64,000 nucleotides of DNA, taken from IMG/VR virus record IMGVR_UViG_3300027782_000025, positions 210,626-274,625 of that record; one strand, 5' to 3'. The notes beneath the pieces were generated by a model that saw only the letters and a list, made by a program, of their open reading frames with translations, was not told the origin of the DNA and did not search any database. Positions 17,302 to 64,000 of the stretch are shown here, piece after piece (within the stretch, counting starts at the first letter, position 1; every line of letters starts with the position of its first letter). Position numbers and translations under genes: made by a program.

Positions 17302-17800
17302 TTGGGTACTGGCAAATGTACCCCGCGAGCTTATTAATTCATCATTGTTTAAATTCAATGTGAAGCTACAAGTCATAGAAAGGCTAGATGACAGCAACAA
17401 GCCAGTCTATAAAGTGATCACTGTCGACATGTTGGCAAATGTCGACATCGATTATGAGACTCTCGAAGAGAATATCTGTGATATTCCAGCCCAATTCGCT
17501 TTCTGGTCTGCTGTGTATTCAGAAGTTAGATTGGGTGTGGCGATTGCTGAACGTAAACTCAAAGTAAGGAGGGCAGAAGCGACAAAAGCGGTTCTGGAAG
17601 AAGCCAGGACAAATAATGTAAAATTGACTGTTGATCAGATTAAAAGTATCGTTGAAGCCGATACATTATTAACCAAAGCTGAGATCTCGTATAGTGAAAT
17701 ACAGATGAAAGCCGGTAAGCTGTATAACATGGTCGAAGCTATAAAAATGAAAGCCGAATTGGCAAGAACACTGGCTGGTTTTAAAAAATTAGAAAGATAA
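17282..17800 (+). CDS. UvsY-like recombination mediator (putative)
   Basis: Helical hairpin pattern (IDYETL...IPAQFAFWSAVY...LTVDQIKSIVEAD) directly upstream of the gp32-like SSB, as in T4-like phages. Confidence 0.55.
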   Translation: MENENRDWVLANVPRELINSSLFKFNVKLQVIERLDDSNKPVYKVITVDMLANVDIDYETLEENICDIPAQFAFWSAVYSEVRLGVAIAERKLKVRRAEATKAVLEEARTNNVKLTVDQIKSIVEADTLLTKAEISYSEIQMKAGKLYNMVEAIKMKAELARTLAGFKKLER

Positions 17801-28162: not shown

Positions 28163-29239
<1,077 letters not shown>

Positions 29240-42738: not shown

Positions 42739-42739
42739 G

Positions 42740-44491
42740 TTGAAAATCAGAGTACAATTCAGAAGAGCCACATCAAGCGCTTGGACATCTACAAATGTTA
42801 TATTAGCAGCTGGCGAAGTCGGTTTTGAGACCGACACAAATAAAATAAAATTTGGCGATGGACTGACAGCATGGTCTGAATTATTATATGCCAATTTGTC
42901 AAGTGTTGGTAGCGTATATTCGATTACAGCTGGAAAAGGTCTTCTAGGCGGTATTATAACCACAACGGGGACATTGTCGCTTGATAATAACTATGTCGCA
43001 ACGCTTGAAGATAAGCAGGTCTTATCTAATAAGACATTCGGATCGACTCTAGACTATCTAACTTCTATCTCGACATCAAGCAACACATTAACGTTAGACT
43101 TAACTCAAGGGCCTGACTATTATGTTTCATTAAACAGTAACATTACCACTGTCACATTCATAAATAAGCCCGACTATGGTAGATTATCATATTTTACTAT
43201 GATTATAAGAAACCCAGCTAAATACACTTTAGCTTGGCCATCATCTATACATTGGGAAAACAACACCACACCAGAATTAAGCACTGATGGAAAAGAAGAT
43301 GTATATTTCTTTATAACCACAGATGGTGGTGCGACTTTTTATGCCTCTGCTCTAGGCATCAAGTACAGTAATCCTAATTTACCAATAACTCAAGTCGCTA
43401 AGTTTACCGAGGCAAATGATGTTAAATATGGCACTGCTGTGGCGATGTCAGGTAATGGCGAATATGTAGCTGTTAGTAGTAGTTATTCGAATTCTGTTGG
43501 TTCGAAAGTTTACGTCTACAGAATTAGTAATGGTCTTTGGGAACGTCAATCGACTATCATCCCGACATCTCCAACTGCTTTGGCTTTCGGCCAATCATTA
43601 GTATTATCTTCTGATGGCGCACTATTAGTGATTGGCGATCCGCTAGACAATGCTGACGGCGCATCAGCTGGCACTTGCTACATATATCAGAGACTCTCAA
43701 TGGCTTGGAGTCTTTTAACCAAGATCGATATATCTGATCCAGCGGCTGGTAAGATGTATGGTAACACTGTGACTGTAAATGAAGATGCCACAGCAATTGC
43801 TGTCGGTTCTCCGAGTTCATTTGGCAGTGGCGTTGCTGGGTCGGTCTACGTTTTTTCCCTAAATCGGCTAACGTTAACTTGGTCTCAGAGCGCTAAGATT
43901 TCGCAGCAAGGAAACGTCCAAAATACTTTGTTCGGAAGTTCTATAGATTTTAGCGCAGATGGGCTTTATCTAGCTATCGGCGCGCCATCTTCTAACCAAG
44001 CTCATATCTATAACAACGTTAATAATGCTTGGGTGAAGCAGTTTACTCTTTTTCCGACAAATGCTCCAGCTCAATCTAGATTTGGTACTAATGTTAAATT
44101 ATCTGGAGACGGTAATTTTTGTTTAGTATGTGATCCAACAGGAGGCGTTGGTGGTTATATTATAGCTTATGGTAGGAGCGGAACTAATTGGGTCCAGCTA
44201 CAATTAATTAATGAGTCAGTGCAGAATATAGGCAATAAATTTGGACAGAGCTTGGCTATTAGCTATGATGGTACAAAATGCGTGGTTGGAGCTGATGGTG
44301 TTAATCAGAACACCGGCAGAACATATGCTTTTACTAGAAATGGCTTAGCTTATGACGAAGAAGCGGTGTTTGGGCCATCAGATGTCGCGGGTGGCATTAG
44401 ATTCGGATACGCTACGAGTATGTCTTCAGACGGCACCACTACTGTGTCTTCAGCAATTGATGCTAATTCTGCATATATATTTATCAAATAA
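42740..44491 (+). CDS. Fibre protein: Mtd_N-like anchor, LAWP...DGG domain, FG-GAP propeller
   Basis: TTG 42740 has SD GGAGG (42727-31) inside the upstream gene end; FGxSV/GAP repeats. Confidence 0.88.
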   Translation: MKIRVQFRRATSSAWTSTNVILAAGEVGFETDTNKIKFGDGLTAWSELLYANLSSVGSVYSITAGKGLLGGIITTTGTLSLDNNYVATLEDKQVLSNKTFGSTLDYLTSISTSSNTLTLDLTQGPDYYVSLNSNITTVTFINKPDYGRLSYFTMIIRNPAKYTLAWPSSIHWENNTTPELSTDGKEDVYFFITTDGGATFYASALGIKYSNPNLPITQVAKFTEANDVKYGTAVAMSGNGEYVAVSSSYSNSVGSKVYVYRISNGLWERQSTIIPTSPTALAFGQSLVLSSDGALLVIGDPLDNADGASAGTCYIYQRLSMAWSLLTKIDISDPAAGKMYGNTVTVNEDATAIAVGSPSSFGSGVAGSVYVFSLNRLTLTWSQSAKISQQGNVQNTLFGSSIDFSADGLYLAIGAPSSNQAHIYNNVNNAWVKQFTLFPTNAPAQSRFGTNVKLSGDGNFCLVCDPTGGVGGYIIAYGRSGTNWVQLQLINESVQNIGNKFGQSLAISYDGTKCVVGADGVNQNTGRTYAFTRNGLAYDEEAVFGPSDVAGGIRFGYATSMSSDGTTTVSSAIDANSAYIFIK

Positions 44492-44500
44492 GAGATAATC

Positions 44501-45136
44501 ATGACAATTAGAGCACAGTTCAGAAGAGGCACAGTCGCAGAATGGGATAATATAAATCCGATCTTATTGATAGGTGAAATTGGTTACGCTACTGACGCTA
44601 GTAGATTTAAAATCGGCGATGGGATTAAGAATTGGCGCGATTTACCATTCGTTTCCGCCGGTGGTGCTGGTACTTTAACGGCTATAACCGCAGGCAAAGG
44701 TTTAATAGGTGGACTGATAACTACGTCAGGCACTATAGCTGTCGATGATTCTGTAATTATGACTCTTGACACGCCACAGACCATATACAATAAAACTCTT
44801 AAATCTCCTAGCGAAATAGTTAATCGGATAGCTCATACCGGTGGAGTTTTAAATATAGACGCTAGTTTGGCTAATGATCATTATATATATCTGACTGGAA
44901 ATATAACAAACATAAATTTTGAGAACATTGACCACATTGGTAAGATGGTATATATTCGATTATTATTCGAATCGACAAGCATTCATTCGATAAATTGGCC
45001 GCCGTATGTTATGTGGCCAAATAGCCAACAGCCAATGCTTAGTGGCAGCGGCAGGATAGACATCATTGGTTTAATGACTTTCGACGATGGCGTGAATTTT
45101 TTTGGGAAAAAAGAATCTAGTAACTTAAGCGTTTGA
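44501..45136 (+). CDS. Short fibre/adaptor protein: Mtd_N-like anchor + INWP...DDG domain
   Basis: QFRRGT...NPILLIGEIGYATD..RFKIGDG; paralogous to the N-termini of the 42740 and 45149 genes. Confidence 0.85.
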   Translation: MTIRAQFRRGTVAEWDNINPILLIGEIGYATDASRFKIGDGIKNWRDLPFVSAGGAGTLTAITAGKGLIGGLITTSGTIAVDDSVIMTLDTPQTIYNKTLKSPSEIVNRIAHTGGVLNIDASLANDHYIYLTGNITNINFENIDHIGKMVYIRLLFESTSIHSINWPPYVMWPNSQQPMLSGSGRIDIIGLMTFDDGVNFFGKKESSNLSV

Positions 45137-45148
45137 TAGGATCAATTA

Positions 45149-48100
45149 ATGAGCATAAAGATCCAAGTGCGTAGGGACACAGCCAGTAATTGGTTGTCCG
45201 TAAATCCAATCTTATCCTCAGGCGAAATCGGTTTAGAAACTGATACCTTGAGATTTAAATATGGTGATGGGACCCTTAAATGGGAAGATCTGCCTTATCC
45301 CTCTATCGGAGGAGGGAGTGTCCAATCGATTTCTGCTGGGTATGGGCTTCTCGGTGGTATTATAACTAGCCAAGGCGAAATAAATGTCGATGGAAATATT
45401 GCTCTTGATGTCCTAAGCGAACAAGCTCTGGCTAATAAGGCTTTTAAAAACAAATCTGGAACATTTACCAATATCTTCGTCGACAATGGCATATTGAATC
45501 TGGACCTATCCGCATCTAATAATTTTATCGTAAATTTTGAAGAAGACATCGATAGCTTTACCACTTCTAACAATCCAGAAAATGGTATGGCTTTCGTTAT
45601 AACTCTCGTGTTGAATATTACAACTGGCTCAGCCGTCACTTGGCCATCTAATATCATATGGCCAGACAACGTGTTCCCTACCAGCAGTGCTGTCGGGACT
45701 ACAGATATCTTTAAATTATTGACCATCGATGGTGGTTCGTCATTTTATGCTTACATAGTTGGCCAAGGGTATAACACTAATTCTATACCACCGAACTTCT
45801 TGGATGAATTCTTAAGTCCTAGCGATGGTAAACCAGGCGATGGCTTTGGCATATCGGCTGCTATTTCAAAGGATGGTAGAACTGCTGTGGTTGGTTCTAT
45901 ATATAATCAATATTCTGGCGCCGCATATGTGTTTAGAAGATCTGATAATAGATGGCTACAGATAGCCAAACTACTTGGCGAAGATAATGAAAGTGCTTTT
46001 GGAACGTCAGTTGCGATTTCTGAATATGGTGATGTGATAGCAGTAGGTGCACCTCAAGAAGGCACCAACGATATTGGCGCTGCTTATATCTTCACCGAAG
46101 CCAATGATTCTTGGTTAAACAATAAAATAATACCTGAAGATAGCGCCGACATAACGGCTAAAAATTTAGTTAGGCTATTTGGCTCAAGTGTCTCGCTTTC
46201 TAATGATGGTACTCTTCTCATTGTTGGAGCCCCAGACTTTGATGTTCCAGATAATCAAAACACCGGCGCGGTTTATGTGTTTAGATCCGACGGTCCGCCA
46301 ACGCCACCACCACCGCCAATTAATAATTATTATATATATGGAACCGGTAAAAACACAGATTGTGAACTTGGCCTAGGTGATAAAAACAATAGGGCACTTT
46401 TTACATTAATCAAATCAGCGACACCGCTGCAAATAGCGGTAGGTAAGAATTATGCTTTATATATAAAGCATGATGGAACATTATGGGCAACTGGTAAAAC
46501 TGGATTAGGCCTACCGTCCGATCCGATGAACCAGTCTTATCGAAATTTTATCCAATTAGGCAGTGATTATTGGCTTGATGTTAAAGCTAATAATAAAGGA
46601 ACTACATTACTCATTAATGCCGATGGATCACTTTGGGGATGTGGTTATAACCAAGATGGTAATCTTGGTATTGGCATAACGACGAATGTTAACGACCTGA
46701 TTATGCTTGATGATAATAATTGGCGAGCCATAAGCTGCTGCTCTTCTAGTTCATATGGCATTAAATCTGATGGGACCCTTTGGAGCTGGGGCGACAACAC
46801 ATATGGCCAGCTTGGACATGGAGATTTATACCCTAGACTGTATCCTGCTGAAGTCGGGGTCGACGCTGGTACCTTTGGCACTAATGTTACTGGCGGCACT
46901 GGCGGCACTGGCGGCACTGGCGGCACTGGCGGCACTGGCGGCACTGGCGGTACAAATCCTGTTTATACTGATTGGGTTTACATTTCGCAAGGAAGTTCTG
47001 CGCATCATGTGTTCGCCATACGAAACGATGGAACTAACGCTACACAAGAAGATGGTACATTGTGGGCATGGGGTAAGAATAATCTGTACCAATTGGGTCT
47101 TAATGATACTATCGATAGAAGCACACCAACACGGGTCAATTCTGAATTCTGGATTAAGGTAGAAGCTGGGACTGACAGTAGCGCTGGTATCACTTCGGCC
47201 GGAGAGTTATTTGTTTGGGGCTATAATTCTTATGGCGAGCTTGGTCTGAATGATGTTGTTGTTAGGCCAATACCTACTAGAAATGCGTTTTTTCCAGCCT
47301 TTTTTAGTGATTTGAGCTTTAATGGCCATACTTTAATCGCTCTAGACACTATAGGTTACATGTACGGCGCAGGTTTTAATTATTATGGGCAATTAAGCCA
47401 AGGCTTTTTTAGCGCTAACGATCCATCAAATCAGATAAGAATGTTAACTCAGATAACCAAATCAGGTGGTTGGATTATCGCTACTATCCTTGATTCTTTA
47501 ATAGCGTCACGTGACAGTTTACTACCACCACCGGTAGCAGGACCGACACCTACACCTGTTACGCCAACACCGACTCCAACTTCTACGCCTACGCCGACTC
47601 CTACACCTACACCAACGCCAACGCCAACCCCTGCGGAATGTGCCACAGTATGGACTGGACGCACGTTACCTGGCCTATCGATTGGCACAATCGCCGCAAG
47701 TCCAGATAAAATAGTAATCACGACTGCAGATGGCGGGACAGCTGCGGTGTCGACAGACGGGATAAACTGGTCGTTAAGCTCAATACCTAGCACGACATGG
47801 GTCGATGCGATGTATGCAAATAATTTATTCTTAGTGAGTGGCTATGATGCCGTCAATGTAGGCACGCAGCGTCTGATATCGTCACCGGACGGTATTAATT
47901 GGACACCTATAGCATTACCAATTGGCATAGCCGGAAAAATGGCGTCCGGCAATTCGATTTATTTAATCTTTAGCGTATGGGGAACATCATTTCTTCGATC
48001 TAATGACCTGATTACTTGGCTGCCTGGTACTTTACCAACTCCGATCGATTGGATTTGCGCTCAAGTGATTCATAATGGTGTCTATTTCTTAGCCACCAGC

Positions 48101-51100
48101 TCCAATTCAGACACTTATATAATATCGACCGATGGTATTAATTGGACTGTGTCATCATTTCCAAGCAGCACATCTAGAAATTGGCAAGCTACTACATTTG
48201 GCTTAGGCCTTTTTGTGGCTATAAACTATAGTGCTAATCCGCCGCTATCTTTAACCTCTAGCGATGGTGTTACTTGGGTCAGCAACACGATGCCTTTGGT
48301 TGGAAAGTATTCAAGGGTGATTTTTGGAAATGGCTTCTTCCTTGCGCTAATTGAAGAATCAACATATGGAGCTCTATCGTACGATGGTAGAACATGGTCT
48401 ACAGTAACTCTACCATACTCTTCTAGTTGGAAAAATGGTGTTTATGCTCACGATATGTTTATAGTTTCTGACCTCGGTAATAATCAGAACTATATCACAT
48501 CGCCATGTAAGAAAACGCCTACGCCTACACCGTCAGGAACATATACTTGGCATTACGTAATATCAGGTTTAAATACTAGAGGCCAACTAGGGTTAAGCGA
48601 TATAGCGGACAGAGACCAATTTATAGCCCAATCGTGGAATACATTACCAGTAAATTCAAACGATTTTCCTTGTATCAGCCATGGCTACGATCATACGATG
48701 ATGGTGAAAACTGACGGTAGTTTATACGCTTATGGTAACAATGATAGAGGCCAATTAGGCTTGCCGACATCGATGGGAGCTTATTTAAACGTTCCAGTTT
48801 TAGTGTCTGCCGGACCTTACCACACTGTTTCATGTGGATATAAATACTCTATAGCTGTTGCTGCTAACGGTGACATATTTGCAACAGGTGCGAACGAGAG
48901 TGGGCAATTAGGTGTCGGTGATTTAACAGACAAGATGGGCCTGACCCAATTGGTCGGCTATAAAGCATACATCGGCACAGATCCAAAGGTAGGCGCTACG
49001 CCATGTGTAGCCACAGGAAAAACAGCGACAGTGATGGTGTTATTAATAAGAATGACGAGTGGTGATTTAATACCAAGATACTATTCATGGGGTCTAAATC
49101 AATCTGGCCAACTAGGCCAATCTAATAGTGACTACTCTTATCAGACATCGACCCCTAGTGAGATAGCAAACCTTAACGCCTCTACACAACCTGCAGTATA
49201 TGGCGGAATATTGAATCATCATTTCTTTGCAATAGCTTTAGATTCAGACTATAATCACATCTTCTGTGGATGGGGTAATAATGACCGCGGCCAGCTGGGC
49301 AACGCCTTAATTAACATAGATAACCCTATGCTTGGGGCTGTAAGTGGATGGTCGAGTGATTCAATAAAAATATTTAATGTGGCTATCGGACAAAGTTTTA
49401 CAGCCTTTATTGCGCAGACTGGGATAGGAAGCCCCGCATCACTATTGATCTCTGGTGCTAATGACCGCGGCCAAATCGGAGTCCCAGTTGGTAATTCCAC
49501 TAATATCTTTACAGAAGTTCCATTTCCAGTGAATTACACAAGCTGGGATAAAATAAGTGCTGGTGCTGATTTTATTTATGCTACCGCCAGACAGACTGGT
49601 AGCCGAAATACTTTTGGCTGGGGCGACAACACATATGGTCAACTAGATGGCGGACCTACAGCTCCTAACAGTTATATCTCGCCAACATTATTAGATGCAC
49701 GAGAATCTGAGACATTAAACACTAACCATCTTGGTTTCGGATTTGGCGGGTATTGGGCTTATTATACCGATACACCATCAGCGAGTGCATGCGCAATACG
49801 CTTAAAATATAATGGAGTGTCGACGAGAATAGGATCAAATGGTTTATCGTTCGCTGTCGGTGATGTAATAACCGTTGCCGGTATAGGCGGCCTTGGTGCT
49901 TGGTCTTCTGTCGATGGTGTGTATAAAATAAAAGATTTTGACAACACTAATGGGATGATTGTCGAGTGCGTTTCGCCAGGGTGTTTTAATGGCTGGAATA
50001 CAGCGAGTGGTTCCTTAGCTGCCCCGATAGTCATGGGTAGAGCTATAACATCAAATGGTGGCGCTGTGGTAACATCTACAGCCACGACGGGTAACGTACC
50101 ATGGGAAGTGAATTTTTATTGCAACGTGACCCCTACTCCAACTCCTACTCCGACCCCGACGCCAACTCCGACGCCAACTCCGACGCCATCAGCCGGTGGC
50201 TCTGCTTTTGCAGCTGGTGCCGCTGGCCTTATCTCAGCCAAATTAGGAGTCATAACTCCTAAATTCACTAAATTTTCACCTGACAATACATCTTGGAAAT
50301 TCGCAGCTGTCGATAGTTTTTATGGCGCGTTCCTTATTAAATCAGATGGTACACTATGGGGCTCTGGGTATAATACTTACGGCCAACTCGGTACTGGTAC
50401 AAATAAGACCGTTACAGATATGGTTCAGATTGGTACTGACAATGATTGGAAATTCATAACCGCCGACGCAGCATCAACCATTGCTATGAAGGATGACGGT
50501 ACTATATATGGCGCTGGCTACAATGACTCTGGAACACTTGGTTTGGGTGACCGACTACCACGGATGTTCTTTACTTTAATAAATTCTGATACTTGGTTGA
50601 CGATAAAAACATATCGACACCAAACCGTGGGTGTGCGTTCAGATGGTAAACTGTTTATATGGGGCTTATTTAGTGACGTATTTTATTCTAGTAACAATAT
50701 AAATAGTCCACCTAGAGATGTGCCATTTGAACTGGTAGATGCCGGAAGTGGTTATATAAAAGCAGATTGCGGATATAATACTTTGTATGCCATAAAGTCT
50801 GATGGTTCATTATATGGTATGGGTGAAAATGGGTCAGCCCAGATAATGATGCCGCCAAGTACTATAATAGAAAGTATGACTAAATTAACTTCATCAGAGA
50901 ATTGGGTTGATATTGCAGCCAGCGACCAAGCACTACTATTGCTAAATGATATTGGTGAGATCTTTTCGTTTGGTATAGGGGAAGTATTAGGGACAGGTAA
51001 ACGGTATACTCCTAATGGTCTTGAAAAAATCGATAAGGATTTTAAATATACAAAGGTATTCGCTACAACCAATGTCGCCGGAGCATTAAAAACTAACAAA

Positions 51101-54100
51101 AGGTTAATGGTTTGGGGAAATAATTATTACAATGCGCTTTCTTTAGCCTTGGTAAATAAAATAAGCACACCACAAATATCAAGGCCAGACAATATGTATG
51201 ATCATGTGGCCTTGTCGGCGACATTTTCTATAGCCATCGGTGCTGTCAATTTAACACCTACACCTACGCCTACAATACCAAATGTTTTATATGTAAATGG
51301 TCGCAATATTTATGGTAATTTGGCTACTGGCGATACCATCGGTAGAGGTTCTTTTTATGAAATATTGAGAGATAATGCCAAAGCTGCAGCAGCCTCAGAG
51401 AGTGCTTGCGCTGTTGTAAAATCAGACGGTACATTATGGACAGCGGGAACTAATTTTAATGGCATATTGGGGCAAGGAAGCAACAATATGCTAAAACAAT
51501 ATACATTAATGCAAGTTGGAACAGATACTAATTGGGTGAATGTAGAATCAAACAGCCTCTCCGCGTTTGCAGCATACAAAGAAAATGGTGACATATATGT
51601 CTGGGGCCAGTCAGGTGTACCTGATTTAATACCTTTTAACGCGTCGAATCCGGGAATCTTTACTAGCCCAACACTTGTGGCTCTTGCAGATATTTCAAAA
51701 ATAGTGTATCTATATATAACTGATCTAATAGTTATTAAAGACAATGGGTCTTTATGGGCTCAGGGAAATAATTCTAACGGTAACCTTGGGCTTGGAGCGA
51801 ATGCAACGATTAACACCTTAACTCAAGTTAACGCCGGCCCATTTAAGACTAGTAGAACATCGTACGCCTACAATGGCTCTAATGGCATGTACATCAAAAC
51901 CGACGGAACGTTGTGGGCTACAGGAGCTAATGGCTTACAGACGCCTTGTTCTGGGTTTTTAGGAACAGGCGATACTTCAATCGTAAACGTCTTAACCAAA
52001 ATCGGCACCGACACAAATTGGGATAAAGTCACACTCATCTGGGACTACGGGGCTTATGCGATTAAAACAGATGGTACACTTTGGGGATGTGGCACACAGA
52101 TACTTAATCAAAACAATACTGCGAATTTTGGTTCTTCTTTAACATTTGTTCAGATTGGCACAGACACAGATTGGCATGATTTTGCAGGCACTAGCTATCA
52201 AGAATTATACATTATTAAAAACGATGGTAGTCTGTATGCTGCTGGAAATAATTTACTTAATAATTTTACAGGACCTATTGCTTCGATCAATCGAATTAAC
52301 GATCCGATGACATTTAATTATGTAAGCAGCGGCCTATGGGATAATGGTAACTTCTTTGTCAGCGGCATCCTTGTACCACCAGGCCCAACACCAACGCCAA
52401 CACCGACACCTACGCCAACTGGTTGCGCCATAAGCTCGTTAACCTTGACACAATTAGCGCCCGCTAATTATAATTCCTACGGTATCGCTATAAGCCCTGA
52501 TGATAAAAACATATACACATCTAGCACATCTAGCCCTCCCAATAGTTTACCTATAGTCAATATTTATCAAAGAAATATGTTTAACGGTAGTTTAACGCTA
52601 ATGCAAAATATTTCTACTCTTGTAAATCCTATCTCTATTTGTGTAAGTCCAGATGGAAAGTTTGTTTATACTGTTATTGATATTGATGCTAAGATTTTCA
52701 TCTATTCAAGAAATGCCACGACTGGTGTGCTAACCGATGTGGGATCAGTCGCAACCGAAACTGGTTACTTATATTTAAATACTACTATCCTCCTACAACC
52801 GCGTGAAATGTGCATAAGCCCAGATGGAAAAAACGCTTATGTAATTTGTTCTAGGGGCGATTCCCCAAATAATGCTATGATAGATGTCTTTACCAGAGAC
52901 ATAGTTACAGGTTTATTGACTCATTTTGAAACAGTCGAAGGCGATATAGGACCAAATAGTTATTCAATTTGTATAAGTCCTGATGGCCTTGATGTTTATG
53001 TTACAGATTATGATAGCGTCAATGGGGTACGTCTGTTCTCAAGAAATGCTTCAACAGGCAGCCTGACATTCAATGGGTCCATTGCATCGGGCTTAGATCC
53101 ACATGGAATTATCGTTAGCCCAGACGGTCTTTCCGTCTATGTCACAAGCGTCAATAATGGCGGCCTTAACGATCAAATAAGCATCTATACTAGAGATGCG
53201 GCTACAGGATTACTCACAGACGCGGGCTCAATAGCAACTGGTGATAAGCCATACCAATTATCAATAAGCGATGACGGTTATTCAGTTTATACTGCTAACA
53301 AGACAGGTCAAAAGATCTCGGTCTATTCTAGGGCCTCAGATGGATCGCTCACGGCTGATGGTTCTGTGTCAACCAGCGGCCAATATCCATATCGCAGTGT
53401 AGTGAGCCATGATGGCAAGAATGTTTATATGACGAATCTTGATTCAAATCACATATCTGTGTTTGCAAGAACATGCGGGTCTGCTCCTCCACCAAACACT
53501 AACCTTTTAGTGTCAGGCATGAGGACAAGCAGCATAGAGCTAGGCGTCCCTGCGAGCTATGTGCCTGCAGTTCCTAACAACTACACTTTCTATGGTGTCA
53601 GTAACGTTGCTACTTGGGACGGTGTCTTTGGGAACACAAATGTCTTATTTGCAACTAAAGGTGGCGAATTATGGGCATGTGGTCGAAATAACTTTGGGCA
53701 GCTTGGTATAGGTAATACTACAAATCAAGCTGAATTAGTGCAAGTCGGCAATGGCACCGACTGGAGTTATGTGGTTACATCTGGTGTCAGCACGCTAGCA
53801 TTAAAGACCGATGGTACCTTATGGGGAACAGGTTATAATAGCTTCGGCGAATTAGGTCTTGGTCATACTAACCAAGTTAACACATTCACACAAGTCGGTG
53901 TTGAGACAGACCATAATAATAATATAGCAATGAGTACGACCGGAAGCTCATATGTTTATAGAAGTGGTATACTTTACGCTACTGGCAACAATGCGAATTA
54001 TCAGCTCGGAACAGGTAATACCATTAATTTAAGCACATTTAACGCAATGGATGCGCAAAGTTGGTATAATGGTCCATGGATGATGGCGGCTCTTCCAAGC

Positions 54101-56914: not shown

Positions 56915-56953
56915 TTTAATTTTTTTAGATATCAAGATTTAAGCGAGAATACC

Positions 56954-59900
56954 ATGACGACAAGCAACAGTTTATTATTAGCCGGCGGTAATTTTTACGG
57001 CCAGCTAGGAGCATCAAGTACTCTTAAACCAACATTTGAATATTGGGCTTTTTCTAGTAAGTATGGTCCTTGGGCTAAAGCATCAACATCAGACAGCGGT
57101 CATACACTATTGATTAATATTGACCAGACATTGTGGGCGTCAGGGAATAACGAATACGGGCAGCTGGGGATTGGCACCACCGGCGCTGGCTATACACAAT
57201 TTACTAAAATTAATGATACTATACAATGGATGGACGTTGCTACTTCAAACTGGGGTTCTTATGGCCTCAGTACAGTAGGCAATTTATATATTTGGGGAAG
57301 ACAGGCAAGCAATAATTTTAATCCCATTGTTTCCATCACAGAGTTAGTTGTTTTAGATTATGTGGGCGGTAAGGTAAAATTCAAAAGCCTTGCTACCGGC
57401 AGTGGTACAAATCACATGCTTTTGATCGACAATGATGGTCAACTGTGGGGATGGGGTTCAAATACACGAGGACAATTAGGCTTAGGTGATACTTCAGTGC
57501 GCATAAATCCTGTTTTGATAAACGCAAATGAATGGCTATCTGCTGCAGTCGGAGATTCTTTTTCTATAGTATTAAGGAAAGATAACACACCATGGGGCAC
57601 TGGTGCTAATGATAGTTTTCAGTTAGGCCAAGGCTCATTCGACTCAAATGATAAAACAGTCTTGACAGCAATAAATACAACATCATCATCTTCTAAGATC
57701 ATTACCCAAATCGCTGCAGGAACAAAGAGTGCCCTTGCTCTAGACAACACTGGGCAGGTTTATGGCTGGGGTGGTAATACTTATGGCGAATTAGGCCTAG
57801 GACATAATTTAAAAGTGCCTGATGCAGCACTTATCCAGAACCTGCCAGGACCAGCAAGCTATATAGCTATTAAAGACCATTCTATTATAGTAGTAAGCAA
57901 CGAAATGCCAACTCCTACACCATGTGTGGCTGGAGAATTAATTATCGCCGGCACAGTGGCGACGGCCGTTAATGCCTACGATTTAGCGATATCAAGTGAT
58001 CAGAAGAATGTCTATGTGGTTCATTTAACCGGAGACATAATATCTATCTATGATCGAAATATAACCACTGGCGCACTTACAAGTGCAGGGACCATAGCCA
58101 CAGGCGAATCATCTACAGCTGTTATATTATCAAACGACGGTATCAATGTCTATGTGGTTAACTCTGCCGGCCAAACAATTTTTATCTATAATAGGAATTT
58201 AACCACTGGCGCACTTACCAGCGCCGGAACCATAGCGACAGAAGATGCACCAAGAGACATAGTCGCATCAAATGATGGTAAAAACGTCTATGTGGTTAAT
58301 AGTCAAAGCAATACAGTCTCTATTTACGATAGAAATTTAACCACTGGCGCACTTACCAGTGCTGGAACAATAGCCACTGGTGATAGTCCATTTAATATAG
58401 CGATATCAAATGATGACAAGAATGTTTATATAAATGAATCTGCTGATGAATTAGTGATTTATAATAGAGATTTAACCACTGGCTCACTTACCAGCGCTGG
58501 AACCATAGCCACGGAGCAGGGTAGTTGGGGTATAGCGGTGTCTAGCGATGATAAGAATGTTTATGTAGTGAATGGTGCAAATGGTAGTAGCAACACTATC
58601 TCGATCTATATTAGAAATTTATCAACTGGCGCACTTGCCAGCGCTGGTACCATAGCCACTGGTACTGGTTCACTCGGGATAGCTGTACCAAATGATGGCA
58701 AGAATGTCTATGTTGTAAACTCTGTTAGTAACACACTTTCGATTTATAGCAGAAATACTACTACTGGTGCTCTAACAATCGCTAGCACTATAGCCACTGG
58801 TTCAACGCCATACAATGTTATCGTGTCAAGCGATAGCAGACATGTTTATGTATGTAACGAGACGGACGACATAATTTCGGTCTTTACCACATGTGAATCA
58901 ACACCTACTCCAACACCTACTCCAACTCCAACTCCAACTCCAACACCAACACCAACACCAACACCAACACCAACACCAACACCAACACCAACACCATGTG
59001 TTGTTGGAGATTTAATAAGCGCAGGCACGATAGCTACGGGAGAATACCCAGCTAGTTTAGCTCTGTCTATCGATCAAAAGAATATTTATGTTACTGGCAA
59101 CTACGCAATTTCTATTTATAACAGAAATTTAACGACTGGCGCACTTACCAGCGCTGGGACCATAGCCGCAACATCGGGAACAGTTGATATAGTCGCAACG
59201 GTCGACAATATTAGCGTTTATGCTGTTAGTTCTGACAGTAATTCGATATTAATCTATAATAGAGAATTGACTGCTGGGGCACTTACAAACTTTGGAACCA
59301 TTGCTACTGGTACTGGACCGCTGAGCATAACTGCGACGATTGATAATATGAGCGTATTTGCGGCTAATTCTGGAGACGATACGCTTTCGGTATACGACAG
59401 AGATATAACCACCGGCGCACTCACTAATATTGGAACTTTAGCAACTGGAGACACGCCTCGGGACTTGGCAGTATCTAATGACGGGAAGAGCATTTATGTG
59501 ACTAACCAAAATAACAATTTAATATCAATTTATAGCAGAGACTTAGTTACTAGAGTAATCACCAGCATCGGCACTATCGCAGCAGGTAGCGTGCCCTGGG
59601 GTGTAGTAGTATCTAACGATAATGATAATGTTTATGTGGTGAATGGTGGTAGCAACACAATCTCGATCTATAACCGAAACTTAACTACTGGCACACTTAC
59701 TAGCGCTGGAACCATAGCTACAGGCGATAACCCGCTCAAAATAGCTATCTCAAATGATGATACAAAAGTTTATGTGACTAGTTATGGCATAAATTCACTT
59801 TCGATTTATAATAGAAATATAGTCACCGGCGCTTTGACTAGCGTCGGTTTTATAGCCGCCGGCACTACACCATACACAGTAGTAGTATCAAATAATAATA

Positions 59901-60883
59901 AAAACGTTTATGTGACTAATTCAGGTGCAGACACAATCTCCATTTTTGCTGTTTGTGAGTTAACTCCAACACCAACCACTTCAGTCGGTGCCGTATTTGC
60001 TTTTGGTAATAATAGTTCGAATATAATCAACCTAGTTTCAGATATCGGTATTATCACTGAGGATATAAGCGTTGTTGGTACAGCTAGATATTCGGGGGCT
60101 GCGGCATCGTTCGGGACCAGCGGAACTGGCAAAGCGATCTTTGCATATGGTGTTAACGCTAGCACCCAGTCTGTTTCTTTATCGAACATCATATCCAGTG
60201 GCGGAACTGTGGCTTATGATACAGCTGGAGTAGGCACAGCAAGATATGGCTTAGCAGCTGCAGGATACGGAGCCGGCAAAGCACTATTTGGGTTTGGCGA
60301 TGCTGGAAAATATTTTCAGTCATACATTCCAGTAAGTATAACTAATCATGTCACTGACAATGGCATAATATCTTCAGATACCATAGGAGTTGGAACAACG
60401 AGATACGGCTTAGCTGCGGCTTCTTATGGCACAGACAAAGCAATATTTGGCTTCGGATTTAAAAACTCTCCTAATTTACATCTCTCTATAACTAATTTAG
60501 TATCGAATACTGGTGTTGTCTCGACCGACACGACTGGTGTTGGAACTGGTCGTCGTGATCTCGCCGCCGCTGGCTACGGAGGAGACAAAGCAGTATTCGG
60601 AGGCGGTAATGGTGATTATAATTCTGGTTCATTTGGCACCTATAATCTTGTCGATAATAATGGCATAGTTTTAAACAATAACACATTCGCGACATTCAGG
60701 CAATGGTATGGTTCAGCCTCTTCTTTTGGGCAATCTGGAGCAGAGCAAGCTATCTTTTCTTTTGGTTTTGTTCCTAACACCCAGACATCATTTACGCTGA
60801 TAATAAATAATAATGGAATACCAAGCAGCGAAGTCGCTCAGATCGGATCGGAGAAGCATAGTGCGTCTGGTGCTAAGTTATAA
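56954..60883 (+). CDS. 1309-aa appendage protein: RCC1 block, two lactonase-like propellers, DTxGVGTAR repeats
   Basis: GNNEYGQLG and GSNTRGQLG; [11 protein letters not shown]...ISIYxRNLTTGALTSAGTIATG blades; AIFGFG...GVGTARYGLAAAGYG repeats. Confidence 0.92.
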   Translation: MTTSNSLLLAGGNFYGQLGASSTLKPTFEYWAFSSKYGPWAKASTSDSGHTLLINIDQTLWASGNNEYGQLGIGTTGAGYTQFTKINDTIQWMDVATSNWGSYGLSTVGNLYIWGRQASNNFNPIVSITELVVLDYVGGKVKFKSLATGSGTNHMLLIDNDGQLWGWGSNTRGQLGLGDTSVRINPVLINANEWLSAAVGDSFSIVLRKDNTPWGTGANDSFQLGQGSFDSNDKTVLTAINTTSSSSKIITQIAAGTKSALALDNTGQVYGWGGNTYGELGLGHNLKVPDAALIQNLPGPASYIAIKDHSIIVVSNEMPTPTPCVAGELIIAGTVATAVNAYDLAISSDQKNVYVVHLTGDIISIYDRNITTGALTSAGTIATGESSTAVILSNDGINVYVVNSAGQTIFIYNRNLTTGALTSAGTIATEDAPRDIVASNDGKNVYVVNSQSNTVSIYDRNLTTGALTSAGTIATGDSPFNIAISNDDKNVYINESADELVIYNRDLTTGSLTSAGTIATEQGSWGIAVSSDDKNVYVVNGANGSSNTISIYIRNLSTGALASAGTIATGTGSLGIAVPNDGKNVYVVNSVSNTLSIYSRNTTTGALTIASTIATGSTPYNVIVSSDSRHVYVCNETDDIISVFTTCESTPTPTPTPTPTPTPTPTPTPTPTPTPTPTPTPCVVGDLISAGTIATGEYPASLALSIDQKNIYVTGNYAISIYNRNLTTGALTSAGTIAATSGTVDIVATVDNISVYAVSSDSNSILIYNRELTAGALTNFGTIATGTGPLSITATIDNMSVFAANSGDDTLSVYDRDITTGALTNIGTLATGDTPRDLAVSNDGKSIYVTNQNNNLISIYSRDLVTRVITSIGTIAAGSVPWGVVVSNDNDNVYVVNGGSNTISIYNRNLTTGTLTSAGTIATGDNPLKIAISNDDTKVYVTSYGINSLSIYNRNIVTGALTSVGFIAAGTTPYTVVVSNNNKNVYVTNSGADTISIFAVCELTPTPTTSVGAVFAFGNNSSNIINLVSDIGIITEDISVVGTARYSGAAASFGTSGTGKAIFAYGVNASTQSVSLSNIISSGGTVAYDTAGVGTARYGLAAAGYGAGKALFGFGDAGKYFQSYIPVSITNHVTDNGIISSDTIGVGTTRYGLAAASYGTDKAIFGFGFKNSPNLHLSITNLVSNTGVVSTDTTGVGTGRRDLAAAGYGGDKAVFGGGNGDYNSGSFGTYNLVDNNGIVLNNNTFATFRQWYGSASSFGQSGAEQAIFSFGFVPNTQTSFTLIINNNGIPSSEVAQIGSEKHSASGAKL
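58901..58996 (+). repeat. (Thr-Pro)16 repeat including perfect (ACACCA)9
   Basis: Perfect hexamer run 58943-58996. Confidence 0.95.
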
Positions 60884-60918
60884 TCTAAAGAGTAAATAGA
60901 TTATAAGGAGAAAATAAT

Positions 60919-61542
60919 ATGGCAAGCAAGTTGAATTCGGAATTTAATTATCGTTACCAAGTCCAAGGCGAGACAGTCTGGGAAAAAATTAAAACCCTAA
61001 AGGGTTTTCTAGAGGGCCGAATAAGGGCAGCAGCTCTTGAAGAAATTAGCGAAAAGAAATACCAAGCTAAACTACTCGAATTAGAGCATCTTAAAAAGAC
61101 TAATGCTTTACCGCACGTTATCCTTAATCTCGAAGCAGAGATTATGGAAACTGAAAGCTTTTTCCAAACACAGACTGAAGCTTTTAAATTGAATCTAGAT
61201 GAAATAGCTATCTTAAATAAATTATTGGCTGAAGCTTATGAAATAGCAGAGCCGACAAGGATAGAAGGATACACCGATGAGCAGATGTTCGAGGCAAATG
61301 CGGCAAATGAGTTCACAGTGATGATTGGTAAGGATATCCAAGCTGAGATAATTGCCCATGGCCGACCAAGCGCCGCAAAGATCAGAAATGCTATGTCTAA
61401 CCCTATGACGCTATTAGCACTTCAGAACGCTGGTCTGATACCTAAAGAGGCCATCATGCTTCGTGGTAACGATAGTCCGCTGTCTATAGAACTTAAGCCT
61501 GCTGCTTTAGAAGACCGCTCTACACAACAGCTGATCCAATAA
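60919..61542 (+). CDS. Coiled-coil hypothetical protein between fibre genes (candidate assembly factor)
   Basis: SD AAGGAG; helical, charged, 207 aa. Confidence 0.8.
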   Translation: MASKLNSEFNYRYQVQGETVWEKIKTLKGFLEGRIRAAALEEISEKKYQAKLLELEHLKKTNALPHVILNLEAEIMETESFFQTQTEAFKLNLDEIAILNKLLAEAYEIAEPTRIEGYTDEQMFEANAANEFTVMIGKDIQAEIIAHGRPSAAKIRNAMSNPMTLLALQNAGLIPKEAIMLRGNDSPLSIELKPAALEDRSTQQLIQ

Positions 61543-61621
61543 TATTATTAAATATAAATTTATTAAATCTTAACCGACAAAGATAAATAGTGATGGATTT
61601 ATCAGGTTGGAGTGAATATAA

Positions 61622-64000
61622 ATGGCATGGAAACAAGAGGCTATAATCTACCCCGGACGTAACGCTCCTCCAGCGCCAGTGCCGACACCGACACCGACTC
61701 CAACACCAACCCCAACCCCAACACCTTTCAGTGCTCTAAAATATATCGCTACGGCTGGAAAAATTGGTGGGTTCGACAGTCTTACACAAAAAGCCTGGAT
61801 AGCTAATAATCTAAATAGCTGGGTGCCTTTCGACCTGCCAGTTTCAGGCAGTTGGACCAACAGCATTTATGGTAATGGCAGATTTGTACTGGCCGATCTT
61901 AATACCAAGCGTATATCTTTATCATCCACAGACGGTATAAATTGGACGCAAGGAATAATACCGCCAGATTTTATATCAACTAACCCAAATCCGCCAAGAC
62001 CATTATTTGTCTACGCCGCATCAGCATATTCCAACGGTATCTTCATCGTCATGAGTGATGATGGTAATTCTTGCATAAGATCTACCGATGGCATAAATTG
62101 GGATTACATAATTATAAATACCGACAGACCAACCGGACCATCATCATATACCGGTATTGTTAATATTGCTGTTAATAACGTAAACACGATTGCTTGTAGT
62201 GACGGCTTTGGTGGAGTATTATACTCTACCGATAACGGTATAAATTGGACTTGGAAAAGGATACTCGGAGATGCTAATGATATTTACGGGTGGTATGGTA
62301 TCGCTTATGGAAAAGGCAAATTCGTTTTAATCCAAAATGGTGCGTCTTCTGGCACCAACACCAGAGGCAAAACCGCCATAACTAGCGATTTTATTTCTTT
62401 CACATATGGCAATATACCTAACGGTGGCTGGTATTTCGCTGGTTATAATCCTATCTTTGAAAAATATTACGCTTCTAGTTATAGCCCACGTAGCATTTAT
62501 TCTAGTGTGGATGGTTTAACTTGGTCTTTAGAAATATCTGAAGTATTAACCTCTAGTCCTTATGTCTTTGATGGTAATAATTTAATCGCGCCAAGCTATG
62601 TTTATTTGCCGCCTAATGGTGTATGGAAATATTTCAATATAGATCCAAACAATAATAGTAATGATTTTCTCGTCTCCGCTTCTTATACTGCCCCAACTCC
62701 TGCACCGACCCCAACACCAACCCCAACACCGACACCGACTCCTACACCGACACCGACACCGACTCCTACACCGACACCAACTCCTACACCGACACCAACG
62801 CCGACTCCAACGCCAACACCTACACCAACACCTACTCCTACACCAACACCTACTCCGGCATTTTCTGGTTCTAGCGTTTACATAGGAAATTCTACACAAA
62901 CACTTTCGATATTTTCGCGCGACGCTAGCACGGGGCTATTGTATGGTACATCTACAATTGCTTCAGGATCGTCAAGCGGTGCAACTATCAATGGTGTTTG
63001 TGTTTCCGCTGATGGTACAAACGTTTATGCCCTTGATGTTGATAACACTAGAATTTTAATATTTAATCGCGACATCAACACTGGAGAGTTAACAGCTAAT
63101 GGTATAATTAGCACAGGTAATGGTCTGTCTAGAGAAATTGCTATTTCTGCTGACGGCACATGCGTTTATGTGGTTAAAGTAGTTACGAGTAATGTCGAGA
63201 ATTTAGCCTTACTCTTCAATCGGAACATTAGTACAGGGGCATTATCAGCTGGGACTACAATAAGCACCGGAAACGATCCATCAGGAATATGCATTTCATC
63301 TGATGGCTCTAGTGTATATGTGGTTAATCAAACTTCTGAAACGGTTTCAATATTTTCTCGAAATACTAGCACAGGAGTATTAACTTCCAATGGCACAGTA
63401 CCCACAGATGTAAATCCTTGGAAAATCATTATTTCAGCAGATGGCGCAAGCGTTTATGTTCTTTATACAGACGCGAAAATGATAATTTTTTCTCGCAACA
63501 CTAGCACAGGAGCATTAACCGACAATGGAACGATTACATTATCGACTGGTATCAATCAGTATACATATGGTTTTTGCATTTCTGTAGATGGAAAAAACGT
63601 TTATGTGACTAATAATTATTTTAACGAAGTATTAATCTTTGATCGCAACACTTCCACAGGAGGGCTTACTTCTAATGGTAAATTAACCTTAGCAGGCTAT
63701 AATTACCCACAAAAGATTTGTATTTCAGCCGATGGGAAAAATGTTTATGTGGTTTGGTATGGTTCTAATAAAACGTCCATCTTAGACCGAAACACTAGCA
63801 CAGGGTCATTAAGCGAAAGTAGCATAATAGCGTCAGGAGATGGATTTTTAGGAATTTGCATATATCCTTTATCTAATTCACCAACGCCAACGCCAACGCC
63901 AACACCAACACCAACACCAACACCAACACCAACACCAACACCAACACCAACACCAACACCAACACCAACACCAACACCAACACCAACACCCACACCAACA
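61622..64000 (+). CDS. Modular appendage protein, 3' truncated (absent from the ORF track)
   Basis: ATG 61622 (GGAG upstream) opens [25 protein letters not shown]..., then STDGINW BNR-like repeats, a long PT tract, an SADGxxVY propeller and a PT tract; I saw no stop up to base 64000. Confidence 0.88.
62693..62857 (+). repeat. Longest PT linker-encoding repeat (55 codons)
   Basis: CCN-ACN codon pairs, degenerate at third positions. Confidence 0.93.
63881..64000 (+). repeat. (Pro-Thr)20+ repeat including perfect (CCAACA)15, runs off window
   Basis: Perfect hexamer run 63899-63988. Confidence 0.95.

What the first reader, a model, noticed from the sequence alone, without database searches (positions are those of the whole stretch)
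45149..64000. PT-encoding microsatellites as in-frame connectors for domain shuffling, with a visible recombination scar
Seen: the same module types (RCC1, SxDGKNVY propeller, STDGINW block, DTAGVGTAR block) occur in different orders in four genes, usually bounded by CCN-ACN tracts that are mutually homologous and in the same frame. At 54671-54829 a 53-codon stub of about one RCC1 repeat (SYYVYGSGRNQDHQLG...MLLMNDG) lies between two PT tracts. It resembles the start of the full block at about 46320 (NYYIYGTGKNTDCELG), and its DGT runs straight into PTPT where DGTLW is expected. Inference: recombination between PT tracts, possibly driven by the phage RecA/UvsY/gp32 set, adds, deletes and swaps receptor-binding modules without frameshifts. 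This would be a diversification route needing neither an RT nor an invertase.
Basis: partly seen in the sequence, partly recalled or inferred. Interest (0 to 1): 0.64.

Follow-up and report, generated by a model that had tools for sequence, protein, structure and literature searches.

The report
Pro-Thr-linked propeller fibre genes, shuffled
An uncultured freshwater jumbo phage builds giant fibre proteins as strings of beta-propeller domains joined by Pro-Thr linkers, and three related genomes show whole domains gained, lost or replaced at those linkers; this is a new variant of the known way phages reshuffle host-binding proteins, but the supposed recombination scar is an old, conserved remnant.

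Summary
Window 45149-64000 holds three modular genes, H (3921 aa), I (1309 aa) and K (open at the contig end), plus a small conserved gene, J. All module types are beta-propellers: RCC1, lactonase-type, Asp-box-like, FG-GAP and a Kelch-like six-blade 'DTG' module. They are joined by 19 in-frame (CCN ACN)n tracts.

Three related metagenomic genomes (about 80-85% nt identity) support cassette exchange.
- Gene I carries 2, 2, 1 or 0 lactonase propellers between its RCC1 and DTG modules.
- Gene K has three different architectures.
- Module H9 exists as two types that share 40% aa identity.
- Nearest-neighbour relationships flip at or within 55 nt of several PT tracts.

- Breakpoints also fall at a non-PT linker, at gene boundaries and inside modules.
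- Most tracts are synonymously scrambled, with exact shared runs of 26 nt or less, so they are not pure microsatellites.
- Same-type modules within the genome share only 25-55% aa identity, so there are no recent swaps.
- The 51-aa stub is conserved in all four genomes (dN/dS about 0.12), and one of its ends lies inside a blade, which PT x PT exchange cannot produce.
- All the genomes are metagenome assemblies, so some risk of misassembly remains.

Verdict: a new variant of a known kind, with moderate interest.

The parts
45149..56914 (+). Gene H, 3921 aa. Module order: Mtd_N-like tail-fibre N-terminus, FG-GAP, RCC1, Asp-box-like, RCC1 (+100 aa), RCC1, RCC1, lactonase propeller + RCC1, one-blade RCC1 stub, Kelch-like DTG, lactonase propeller.
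46892..46954 (+). (GGC GGC ACT)7 tract encoding (GGT)7 inside the first RCC1 propeller. Its length differs by 9 nt in relative L009.
47543..47635 (+). PT tract between H1 and H2, synonymously scrambled. 25+5 aa here, 33+5 aa in L009.
48515..48535 (+). PT tract between H2 and H3 (7 aa; same length in all relatives).
50129..50194 (+). PT tract between H3 and H4. WIN-L009 identity drops from 0.91 to 0.69 across it.
51254..51274 (+). PT tract between H4 and H5 (7 aa). No identity step here.
52385..52420 (+). PT tract between H5 and H6. WIN's nearest neighbour flips from L172 (98% nt) to L009 (90% nt). The break interval is 52431-52475, just to the right of the tract.
52421..53473 (+). H6 lactonase-type propeller cassette. 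Three divergent types occur among the four genomes. Its right boundary is a Pro-rich non-PT linker at about 53474-53500.
53477..54631 (+). H6 RCC1 block. It has seven blades and closes on its own in the AlphaFold2 model.
54632..54676 (+). PT tract to the left of the stub (scrambled; 15-17 aa in the relatives).
54677..54829 (+). Stub: 51 aa, the first blade of an RCC1 module, cut at ..NDG. It is conserved in all four genomes.
54830..54889 (+). PT tract to the right of the stub (18-20 aa in the relatives).
54890..55762 (+). H8, DTG module: a Kelch-like six-blade propeller.
55763..55852 (+). PT tract between H8 and H9. A topology switch lies inside it (55810-55862). Identity falls from 0.96 to 0.55 across it.
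55853..56911 (+). H9 lactonase-type propeller. It occurs as two types (WIN/L172 versus L009/L173) that share 40% aa identity.
56954..60883 (+). Gene I, 1309 aa: RCC1, pt5, lactonase propeller, pt33, lactonase propeller, pt7, DTG.
57908..57922 (+). PT tract between I1 and I2. It is the left junction of the 0/1/2-propeller indel seen among the relatives.
58898..58996 (+). PT tract between I2 and I3, largely pure (CCA ACA)n. It is the only junction in 54500-60400 that is not bridged by k=31 contigs.
59963..59983 (+). PT tract between I3 and I4. It is the right junction of the indel. L172 switches here from WIN-like (95% nt) to L009-like (94% nt).
60919..61542 (+). Gene J, 207 aa, no known family. 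It is a conserved anchor next to DTG genes in about 80 IMG/VR loci.
61622..64000 (+). Gene K (open at the contig end): 20-aa N-terminus, pt15, Asp-box-like module, pt58, lactonase propeller, pt41, then the contig ends.
61682..61726 (+). First PT tract of K. The module that follows it differs in L173 (DTG instead of Asp-box-like).
62687..62860 (+). Second PT tract of K, with 18- and 30-nt higher-order repeats. The module after it differs: lactonase propeller here, DTG in L009 and L173.
63878..64000 (+). Pure (CCA ACA)n tract in which the contig ends (an assembly break).

Best explanation
The region encodes virion fibre or adhesin proteins of an uncultured freshwater jumbo phage. Each is built as beads on a string: autonomous beta-propeller modules joined by Pro-Thr linkers. 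The modules are RCC1, lactonase-type, Asp-box-like, FG-GAP and Kelch-like DTG. A propeller's N- and C-termini sit side by side, so a module can be inserted, removed or replaced at a linker without disturbing its neighbours.

Shown: over evolutionary time, at synonymous divergence of about 0.3 to more than 1 between the genomes compared, whole modules have been gained, lost and replaced as cassettes whose junctions lie in or next to the PT tracts. The tracts themselves change length in steps of 6 nt.

Inferred: the exchanges happen by homologous or homeologous recombination during co-infection, using the phage's own UvsX/UvsY/gp32/RusA-like set. The recombination would seed in the roughly 80%-similar CCN-ACN tracts and in the short conserved module ends beside them. 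Selection would then keep only domain-intact, in-frame products.

The 51-aa stub is an ancient, conserved leftover of the first blade of an RCC1 module. An event with one end inside a module made it; PT x PT exchange did not.
For: - Architecture. DTG fold.
- Gene I is RCC-pt-LAC-pt-LAC-pt-DTG in the window and in the independent assembly L172. It is RCC-pt40-LAC(other type)-pt4-DTG in L173, and RCC-pt35-DTG in L009. The alignments diverge exactly at the tracts.
- Gene K has three architectures.
- Identity and synonymous divergence are mosaic module by module. Against L009, aa identity runs 94, 81, 89, 66, 67, 91, 96, 98, 40% for H1 to H9, and dS ranges from 0.26 to more than 2.
- Nearest-neighbour flips: H5 tail WIN-L172 98% nt, then H6-LAC WIN-L009 90% and WIN-L172 64%. 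I3 WIN-L172 95%, then I4 L172-L009 94%.
- Four-taxon informative sites switch topology at 52431-52475 and at 55810-55862.
- Identity steps at the 8 PT tracts of H exceed those at random positions in two of three genome pairs (P 0.005 and 0.03).
- Tract lengths differ between genomes by multiples of 6 nt.
- Assembly support: a k=31 contig spans 54500-58898 with no differences, and an independent sample gives identical contigs.
- Recombination genes are present. No RT or invertase was found.
- Stub: conserved at 90-98% aa, dN/dS 0.12.
Against: - Only three relatives were found and all are metagenome assemblies. L009's short gene I could not be confirmed independently.
- Among the homologous-replacement breakpoints in H5-I1, only 2 of 6 lie at PT tracts. 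About 15% of that stretch lies within 55 nt of a tract, giving P about 0.22. The other four are at a Pro-rich non-PT linker, an intergenic gap and inside two modules.
- Three or four of the eight PT tracts in H show no identity step, including both tracts that flank the stub.
- Scrambled tracts share 26 nt or less exactly, which is poor substrate for strict homologous recombination.
- Because almost every module boundary is a PT tract, any cassette-level change must fall in one. The pattern therefore does not separate mechanism from selection.
- No trustworthy within-population structural variants were seen. The joints have sides of 36 nt or less and trace to PT cross-matches.
Confidence: 0.6

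Rival explanations
1. The PT tracts are only structural linkers: extended spacers that may be O-glycosylated. Recombination starts in the homologous module sequences on either side. Breakpoints appear at linkers because only recombinants with intact domains survive. PT-tract DNA plays no mechanistic part.
For: - Breakpoints also occur at a non-PT Pro-rich linker (53452-53503), at two gene boundaries and inside two modules.
- The break near 52385-52420 lies 11-55 nt to the right of the tract, in conserved module-start codons.
- Most tracts are synonymously scrambled.
- Every tract reads Pro-Thr, never the other two frames. This indicates selection at the protein level.
- A glycosyltransferase and a sugar epimerase are encoded nearby.
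Against: - Where different module types are joined, as in the variants of genes I and K, the alternatives share no homology at the junction other than the tract.
- One switch maps inside a tract (55810-55862).
- The tracts behave as unstable repeats, with 6-nt length changes, pure cores and higher-order periods.
Confidence: 0.3
2. The differences in module order are metagenome assembly artefacts: assemblers jump or collapse between similar PT repeats.
For: - The window's contig ends inside a pure PT tract.
- k=31 contigs break at the 58898-58996 tract.
- L009's gene I junction is a 105-nt tract with a 71-nt pure core. Its product is on record only from that one contig.
Against: - The same gene I architecture appears in two independent assemblies (window and L172). 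The same nine-module order of H, stub included, appears in three.
- Scrambled tracts are unique sequence.
- A single k=31 contig crosses five tracts without any difference.
- The pure cores use different units in different tracts: ACACCC, ACACCT and ACACCA. Collapse between them is therefore unlikely.
- The nearest-neighbour flips involve hundreds of sites within otherwise colinear sequence.
Confidence: 0.1
3. There is no recombination. Modules simply evolve at different rates, with distal receptor-binding modules under diversifying selection, and this gives step-like identity profiles at module borders.
For: - The steps coincide with module borders.
- dN/dS is higher in the most divergent modules: 0.28 for H9 and 0.29 for I4.
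Against: - Synonymous divergence differs several-fold between adjacent modules.
- The identity of the closest relative changes between adjacent modules, and four-taxon topologies switch. Rate variation cannot produce either.
- Presence or absence of whole modules is not a rate effect.
Confidence: 0.03

Closest known systems
Recombination between conserved motifs in T-even tail-fibre and adhesin genes (His boxes in gp37; glycine-rich motifs separating hypervariable segments in gp38)
   Same: Short conserved sequence elements separate variable receptor-binding segments. Exchanges between related phages fall at or near these elements and swap specificity modules in frame. PMC3157838 describes the GRM/HVS design and the chimeras from RB5 x RB32 crosses. 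The His-box work is recalled from memory (Tetart et al. 1998).
   Different: Here the elements are low-complexity Pro-Thr repeats rather than structural core motifs. The units exchanged are whole 300-aa propeller domains. Modules also change in number and order, not only in allele. No host-range data exist.
Collagen-like repeats flanking variable regions in Streptococcus thermophilus phage antireceptor genes
   Same: Repetitive, in-frame, low-complexity coding tracts separate distinct domains of a phage receptor-binding protein (PMC5601072, citing Duplessis and Moineau 2001). That they were proposed as recombination sites is recalled from memory.
   Different: Gly-X-Y triple-helix repeats rather than Pro-Thr. 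Siphophages of Gram-positive hosts. Much smaller proteins.
Pro-Thr box linkers of Cellulomonas fimi cellulases (CenA/Cex)
   Same: A (Pro-Thr)n run joins autonomous domains (PMC8209791). The domain order is reversed between two genes that share the conserved PT box, which was read as region shuffling (Warren et al. 1986, recalled from memory).
   Different: Bacterial secreted enzymes with one linker each, and no population-level mosaic evidence. Here there are up to nine linkers per protein in a phage structural gene cluster.
Tandem repeats creating disordered regions in Borg elements
   Same: Fast-evolving in-frame tandem repeats inside ORFs of huge extrachromosomal elements (PMC9879509; title and abstract seen).
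   Different: The Borg repeats are described as recently formed and independent in origin. They are not reported as boundaries of exchanged domains.
Diversity-generating retroelements (Bordetella phage BPP-1 Mtd)
   Same: H starts with the Mtd N-terminal domain (PF18454, E 8.5e-11). The biological goal, varying a fibre tip, is the same.
   Different: There is no reverse transcriptase in the 274-kb record and no template/variable repeat pair. The variation is at the level of whole domains.

Membership tests
Phage tail-fibre / receptor-binding protein genes with modular exchange | The protein is a virion fibre or adhesin | tested here: inconclusive
   The N-terminal 40-50 aa match Mtd_N and many PHROG tail-fibre and tail-spike families. 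Four consecutive genes share this motif. There are no virion proteomics or structures.
Phage tail-fibre / receptor-binding protein genes with modular exchange | Mosaic relationships among related phages, with segment-wise changes of closest relative | tested here: met
   Per-module identities, dS and four-taxon topology switches.
Phage tail-fibre / receptor-binding protein genes with modular exchange | Exchange changes host range | not testable with these tools
   The phage is uncultured and its host is unknown.
Recombination hot spots at conserved linker motifs | Breakpoints concentrated at the motif beyond chance | tested here: inconclusive
   Identity steps at the PT tracts of H exceed random positions in 2 of 3 genome pairs. 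All junctions between different module types lie in PT tracts. Only 2 of 6 homologous-exchange switches lie at PT tracts. The sample is four genomes.
Pro-Thr box interdomain linkers | A run of alternating Pro and Thr between independently folding domains | tested here: met
   19 tracts of 5-58 aa between Pfam- or AlphaFold-defined propellers.
Pro-Thr box interdomain linkers | Extended, O-glycosylated conformation | not testable with these tools
   A glycosyltransferase-like gene (22046-24010) and an epimerase-like gene (28163-29188) are present. No link to the tracts is shown.
Microsatellite (pure short tandem repeat) | Uninterrupted repeats of one 1-6 nt unit, with length polymorphism | tested here: inconclusive
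   Two tracts in the range are pure (CCA ACA)n and the rest are synonymously scrambled. Lengths differ between genomes in 6-nt steps.
Contingency locus (phase variation by repeat slippage) | Slippage shifts the reading frame and switches the gene on or off | tested here: not met
   The unit is 6 nt and all observed length differences are multiples of 3 or 6. The frames stay open.
Diversity-generating retroelement | Reverse transcriptase plus a template/variable repeat pair | tested here: not met
   No RVT_1 match in the record. The record is about 70% complete.
Invertase-driven fibre switching (Gin/Cin, shufflon) | Site-specific serine recombinase with inverted repeats flanking alternative C-termini | tested here: not met
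   No Resolvase-family match. All modules lie on one strand.
RCC1 repeat (for the stub) | Match to the RCC1 repeat profile | tested here: inconclusive
   Pfam RCC1 gives E 0.025 and 15.6 bits, below the 21.7-bit cut-off. An HMM built from this phage's own RCC1 modules gives E 2e-6 over one blade. Local alignment to the first blade of H is about 9 SD above shuffles.
Kelch-type six-blade propeller (for the DTG module) | Six four-stranded blades superposable on Kelch domains | tested here: met
   AF2 pLDDT 95.5 and pTM 0.92. Foldseek TM 0.84/0.85 to 6hrl_A, E 7e-14, 12-15% identity. There is no Pfam Kelch hit, so the fold is shared but family membership is not shown.

The most novel reading that the evidence does not exclude
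PT-coding repeats in this lineage of huge freshwater phages are an evolved cassette system. The repeat DNA itself provides portable, frame-preserving homology that lets the phage's UvsX-type machinery splice any propeller module next to any other, within and between genes. This would generate combinatorial adhesin arrays without an RT, an invertase or long flanking homology.
Probability: 0.3. Interest if true: 0.72.

Novelty: new variant of a known kind. Interest (0 to 1): 0.52.

Why it matters
Host recognition is the main barrier to predicting and engineering phage host range. This locus shows a simple architecture: closed propeller domains, whose two ends emerge side by side, joined by a uniform repeat linker. 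That architecture has allowed domain number, order and type to change among close relatives in nature.

If the repeat DNA itself promotes the exchange, it would be a general low-complexity adaptor for in-frame domain shuffling, and it could be copied for modular protein or phage engineering. It would also explain why such genes break metagenome assemblies and are under-reported.

The locus also adds a widespread, previously unnamed Kelch-like propeller (DTG) and its partner gene J to the list of uncultured-phage structural modules.

Tried and rejected
- Megablast of gene H, and tblastn of J and of the DTG module, against about 50,000 cultured and deposited phage records gave no match. The clade has no cultured member. 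The DnaE-type polymerase is nearest to an uncultured 595-kb phage.
- The search for homologous proteins, seeded on the RCC1 module of gene I, was swamped by generic multi-RCC1 proteins and gave no orthologues.
- Exact-sequence look-ups for the short (L009) gene I product returned only the original contig. My look-up of the L173 gene I used a wrong start codon, so it says nothing.
- The listed 'joints', including one that skips the stub (54670 to 54833), have sides of 36 nt or less and the same depth as the phage's own downstream contig. They are best explained by its other PT tracts cross-matching. I rejected them as evidence for structural variants.
- An AlphaFold2 run tested whether the stub supplies a blade to the preceding RCC1 propeller. 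The propeller closes with seven blades on its own. The stub and its linkers have pLDDT 21-36. This gives no support for docking, but with a 14-row alignment it is not evidence against folding.
- Recent swaps between genes of the same genome were rejected. The best same-type pairs are 53-55% identical (I2-I3, A2-A4).
- Frameshift phase variation, a DGR and invertase switching were rejected.

Full report
**Context.** The window is the last 64 kb of a 274,625-bp linear IMG/VR virus record, estimated about 70% complete. The same contig is held as a JGI metagenome record (L171). It comes from freshwater or lake metagenomes.

The genome encodes a split DnaE-type polymerase, a DnaB-like helicase, and UvsX-, UvsY-, gp32- and RusA-like proteins. 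Its polymerase is nearest to an uncultured 595-kb phage. No cultured phage matches the fibre genes. I read it as an uncultured jumbo phage.

**What is in the range.**
- H (45149-56914, 3921 aa), I (56954-60883, 1309 aa), J (60919-61542, 207 aa) and K (61622 onward, open) all lie on the + strand.
- Pfam finds an Mtd_N tail-fibre N-terminus, FG-GAP, many RCC1/RLD blocks and 7-bladed lactonase propellers.
- Splitting the proteins at Pro-Thr runs gives 9, 4 and 3 modules.
With a 50-row alignment it folds with pLDDT 95.5 as a six-blade propeller superposable on Kelch domains (TM 0.84).
- The 'STDGINW block' carries Asp-box-like motifs but has only a weak Pfam BNR hit.
- So every module type is a beta-propeller, a fold whose two termini meet in one blade.
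- Lactonase-type, Asp-box-like and several small modules also begin and end with a Cys within a few residues of the linkers. This suggests disulfide-stapled beads, which is inference.
- More PT-linked giant genes lie at 32057-37363 and, upstream of the window, at genome positions 187408-206508.

**The tracts.**
- All tracts are read as Pro-Thr in the coding frame, never in the other two frames.
- TRF scores them as period-6 arrays with higher-order periods of 12-30 nt.
- Only four tracts in the genome, two of them in the range (58898-58996 and 63878-64000), are pure (CCA ACA)n. The rest mix synonymous codons, and any two share 26 nt or less exactly.
- ACA is enriched in the tracts: 57% of Thr codons, against 34% elsewhere in these genes. 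This fits decayed slippage products.
- Pure cores in relatives use other units, ACACCC and ACACCT. Each tract therefore seems to expand locally rather than being copied from another.
- The contig ends in a pure tract, and k=31 contigs break at the other one. That is an assembly limit, not biology.

**Within the genome.** Same-type modules are only 25-55% identical in protein. There is no sign of recent copying between genes. The different orders in different genes are old.

**Relatives.** Scans of IMG/VR and JGI metagenomes found three related genomes:
- L009 (an 86.9-kb contig, about 82% nt identity);
- L172 (9.7 kb);
- L173 (54 kb).

H keeps the same nine-module order in the window, L009 and L173. 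L172 covers only its 3' part, in the same order. The 51-aa stub and both flanking tracts are present in all four.

Gene I differs:

| Genome | Gene I architecture |
|---|---|
| Window and L172 | RCC1, pt5, LAC, pt33 (pt21 in L172), LAC, pt7, DTG |
| L173 | RCC1, pt40, one LAC of another type (38-45% aa), pt4, DTG |
| L009 | RCC1, pt35, DTG |

The nucleotide alignments run in step up to the tract and diverge immediately after it.

Gene K differs too:

| Genome | Gene K architecture |
|---|---|
| Window | Asp-box-like, pt58, LAC |
| L009 | Asp-box-like, pt19, DTG, pt35, stop |
| L173 | DTG, pt7, Asp-box-like, pt13, DTG |

In about 80 more distant IMG/VR loci anchored on J, the gene next to J is usually a stand-alone DTG protein of about 310 aa. 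It often sits in tandem arrays and mostly has no PT tracts. The PT-linked fusions are therefore a feature of this lineage.

**Mosaicism.**
- Against L009, module-wise protein identity for H1 to H9 is 94, 81, 89, 66, 67, 91, 96, 98 and 40%. Synonymous divergence ranges from 0.26 (H7, H8) through about 1 (H1-H3) to saturation (H9).
- The closest relative changes between neighbouring modules. The H5 tail is 98% nt identical between the window and L172. The adjacent H6 lactonase propeller is 90% identical to L009 and only 64% to L172.
- I3 is 95% identical between the window and L172, whereas I4 of L172 is 94% identical to L009.
- H9 falls into two types: window/L172 and L009/L173.
- Four-taxon informative sites give long runs of one topology with sharp switches.

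The switch intervals are:

| Interval | Location |
|---|---|
| 52431-52475 | 11-55 nt right of PT tract 52385-52420, in conserved module-start codons |
| 53452-53503 | a Pro-rich non-PT linker inside H6 |
| about 54949-55045 | inside H8 |
| 55810-55862 | inside PT tract 55763-55852 |
| 56932-56976 | the H/I intergenic gap |
| 57331-57353 | inside I1 |

A further switch lies at the I/J boundary. Rate variation cannot produce changes of nearest neighbour or several-fold differences in dS, so recombination between lineages is established.

**Are breakpoints enriched at PT tracts?** Only partly.
- Identity steps across the eight PT tracts of H are larger than at random positions in two of three genome pairs (P 0.005, 0.03 and 0.14).
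- Every junction that joins different module types is a PT tract.
- But only 2 of 6 homologous-exchange switches in H5-I1 are at tracts. That is about what a 15% target would give with P about 0.22 (my calculation).
- Half of the tracts in H show no step, including both tracts around the stub.
- Four of the six switches are at domain or gene borders. Selection for intact domains predicts that pattern as well as tract-guided recombination does.
- Nearly all module borders here are PT tracts, so cassette-level changes must fall in them.
- I therefore treat 'cassettes are exchanged at PT-linker borders' as shown, and 'the PT DNA drives the exchange' as a plausible inference, at roughly even odds.

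**The stub.**
- It is one RCC1 unit. It begins just as full modules begin after a linker and is most like the first blade of H.
- It stops at ..NDG, and the next codon is already part of the tract.
- The preceding RCC1 block has seven units and closes as a seven-blade propeller in the model. The stub is not predicted to dock, though confidence there is low.
- It is 90-98% identical in protein across the four genomes, with dN/dS 0.12 against L009 and dS equal to that of the neighbouring H8. It is old and is not decaying.
- An exchange between two PT tracts removes or swaps whole modules and leaves no partial blade. The stub therefore needs at least one end inside a module, through an illegitimate or microhomology event.
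- It is a remnant, but not the 'visible scar' of the proposed mechanism. Why it is conserved is unexplained.

**Assembly caveat.** All four genomes are short-read metagenome assemblies.
- For the window, a single k=31 Logan contig covers 54500-58898 without any difference, and an independent sample yields identical contigs.
- The gene I architecture of the window recurs in L172, and the order of H recurs in three assemblies.
- L009's short gene I and the gene K variants rest on one assembly each.
- The 'joints' are PT cross-matches and are not used.

**Comparison with known systems.**
- In-frame exchange of receptor-binding segments at short conserved motifs is classic for T-even fibres and adhesins (PMC3157838).
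- Collagen-like repeats separate domains in S. thermophilus phage antireceptors (PMC5601072).
- Pro-Thr boxes join cellulase domains (PMC8209791).
- I found no paper describing PT repeats as module borders in phage fibres.
- The system is not a DGR, not an invertase switch and not a frameshift contingency locus.

**Verdict.** This is a new variant of a known kind, with interest about 0.5.

Noticed in passing
window 46892-46954: A perfect (GGC GGC ACT)7 tract encodes (GGT)7 in a loop of the first RCC1 propeller of H. Relative L009 carries 9 nt more at this site. This is a second in-frame repeat type that is length-polymorphic.
   Followed up: partly
module ends throughout H, I and D (e.g. window 47636-48514, 55853-56911, 57923-58897, 58997-59962): Lactonase-type, Asp-box-like and small modules start with a Cys 1-4 residues after a PT linker and end with a Cys 1-4 residues before the next one. 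RCC1 and DTG modules have none. This suggests a disulfide staple closing each bead.
   Followed up: partly
window 54890-55762 and 59984-60880; about 80 IMG/VR loci (L049-L127): The DTG module is a Kelch-like six-blade propeller with no Pfam family. In distant relatives it is a stand-alone gene of about 310 aa, often in 2-4 tandem copies. It is always next to the 207-aa gene J, which has no family either.
   Followed up: partly
window 42163-45300: Four consecutive genes (42163-42738, 42722-44491, 44501-45136 and H) share the same roughly 50-aa Mtd_N / tail-fibre N-terminal motif, as if several different fibres dock on one site.
   Followed up: no
window 12018-13130, 17282-17800, 17809-18762, 19157-19825: UvsX-like recombinase, UvsY-like mediator, gp32-like SSB and RusA-like resolvase: a full phage recombination set.
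   Followed up: yes
window 1726-3126 and 4393-7116: The DnaE-type DNA polymerase III alpha is split into two ORFs separated by about 1.3 kb. The intervening ORFs were not examined.
   Followed up: no
window 22046-24010 and 28163-29188: Glycosyltransferase-like and nucleotide-sugar epimerase-like genes. They might glycosylate the Thr-rich linkers, but nothing ties them to the tracts.
   Followed up: no
window 63878-64000 (contig end): The record ends inside a pure (CCA ACA)n tract, so gene K is truncated by assembly. In L009 the K homologue ends with a PT tract followed directly by a stop, and 13 nt later a gene starts that is 62% identical to the N-terminus of upstream gene B. The same PT-stop-start arrangement occurs at the junction of upstream genes A and B in this genome (genome 200518-200677).
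   Followed up: partly
window 58039-58564: Blade-length tandem repeats of 135-138 nt at 74-77% nt identity inside the lactonase propeller I2, pointing to fairly recent blade duplication.
   Followed up: no
window 32057-64000: Genes D, H, I and K, and all their PT tracts, lie in the same absolute reading frame of the window. This may be coincidence (about 1 in 27).
   Followed up: no
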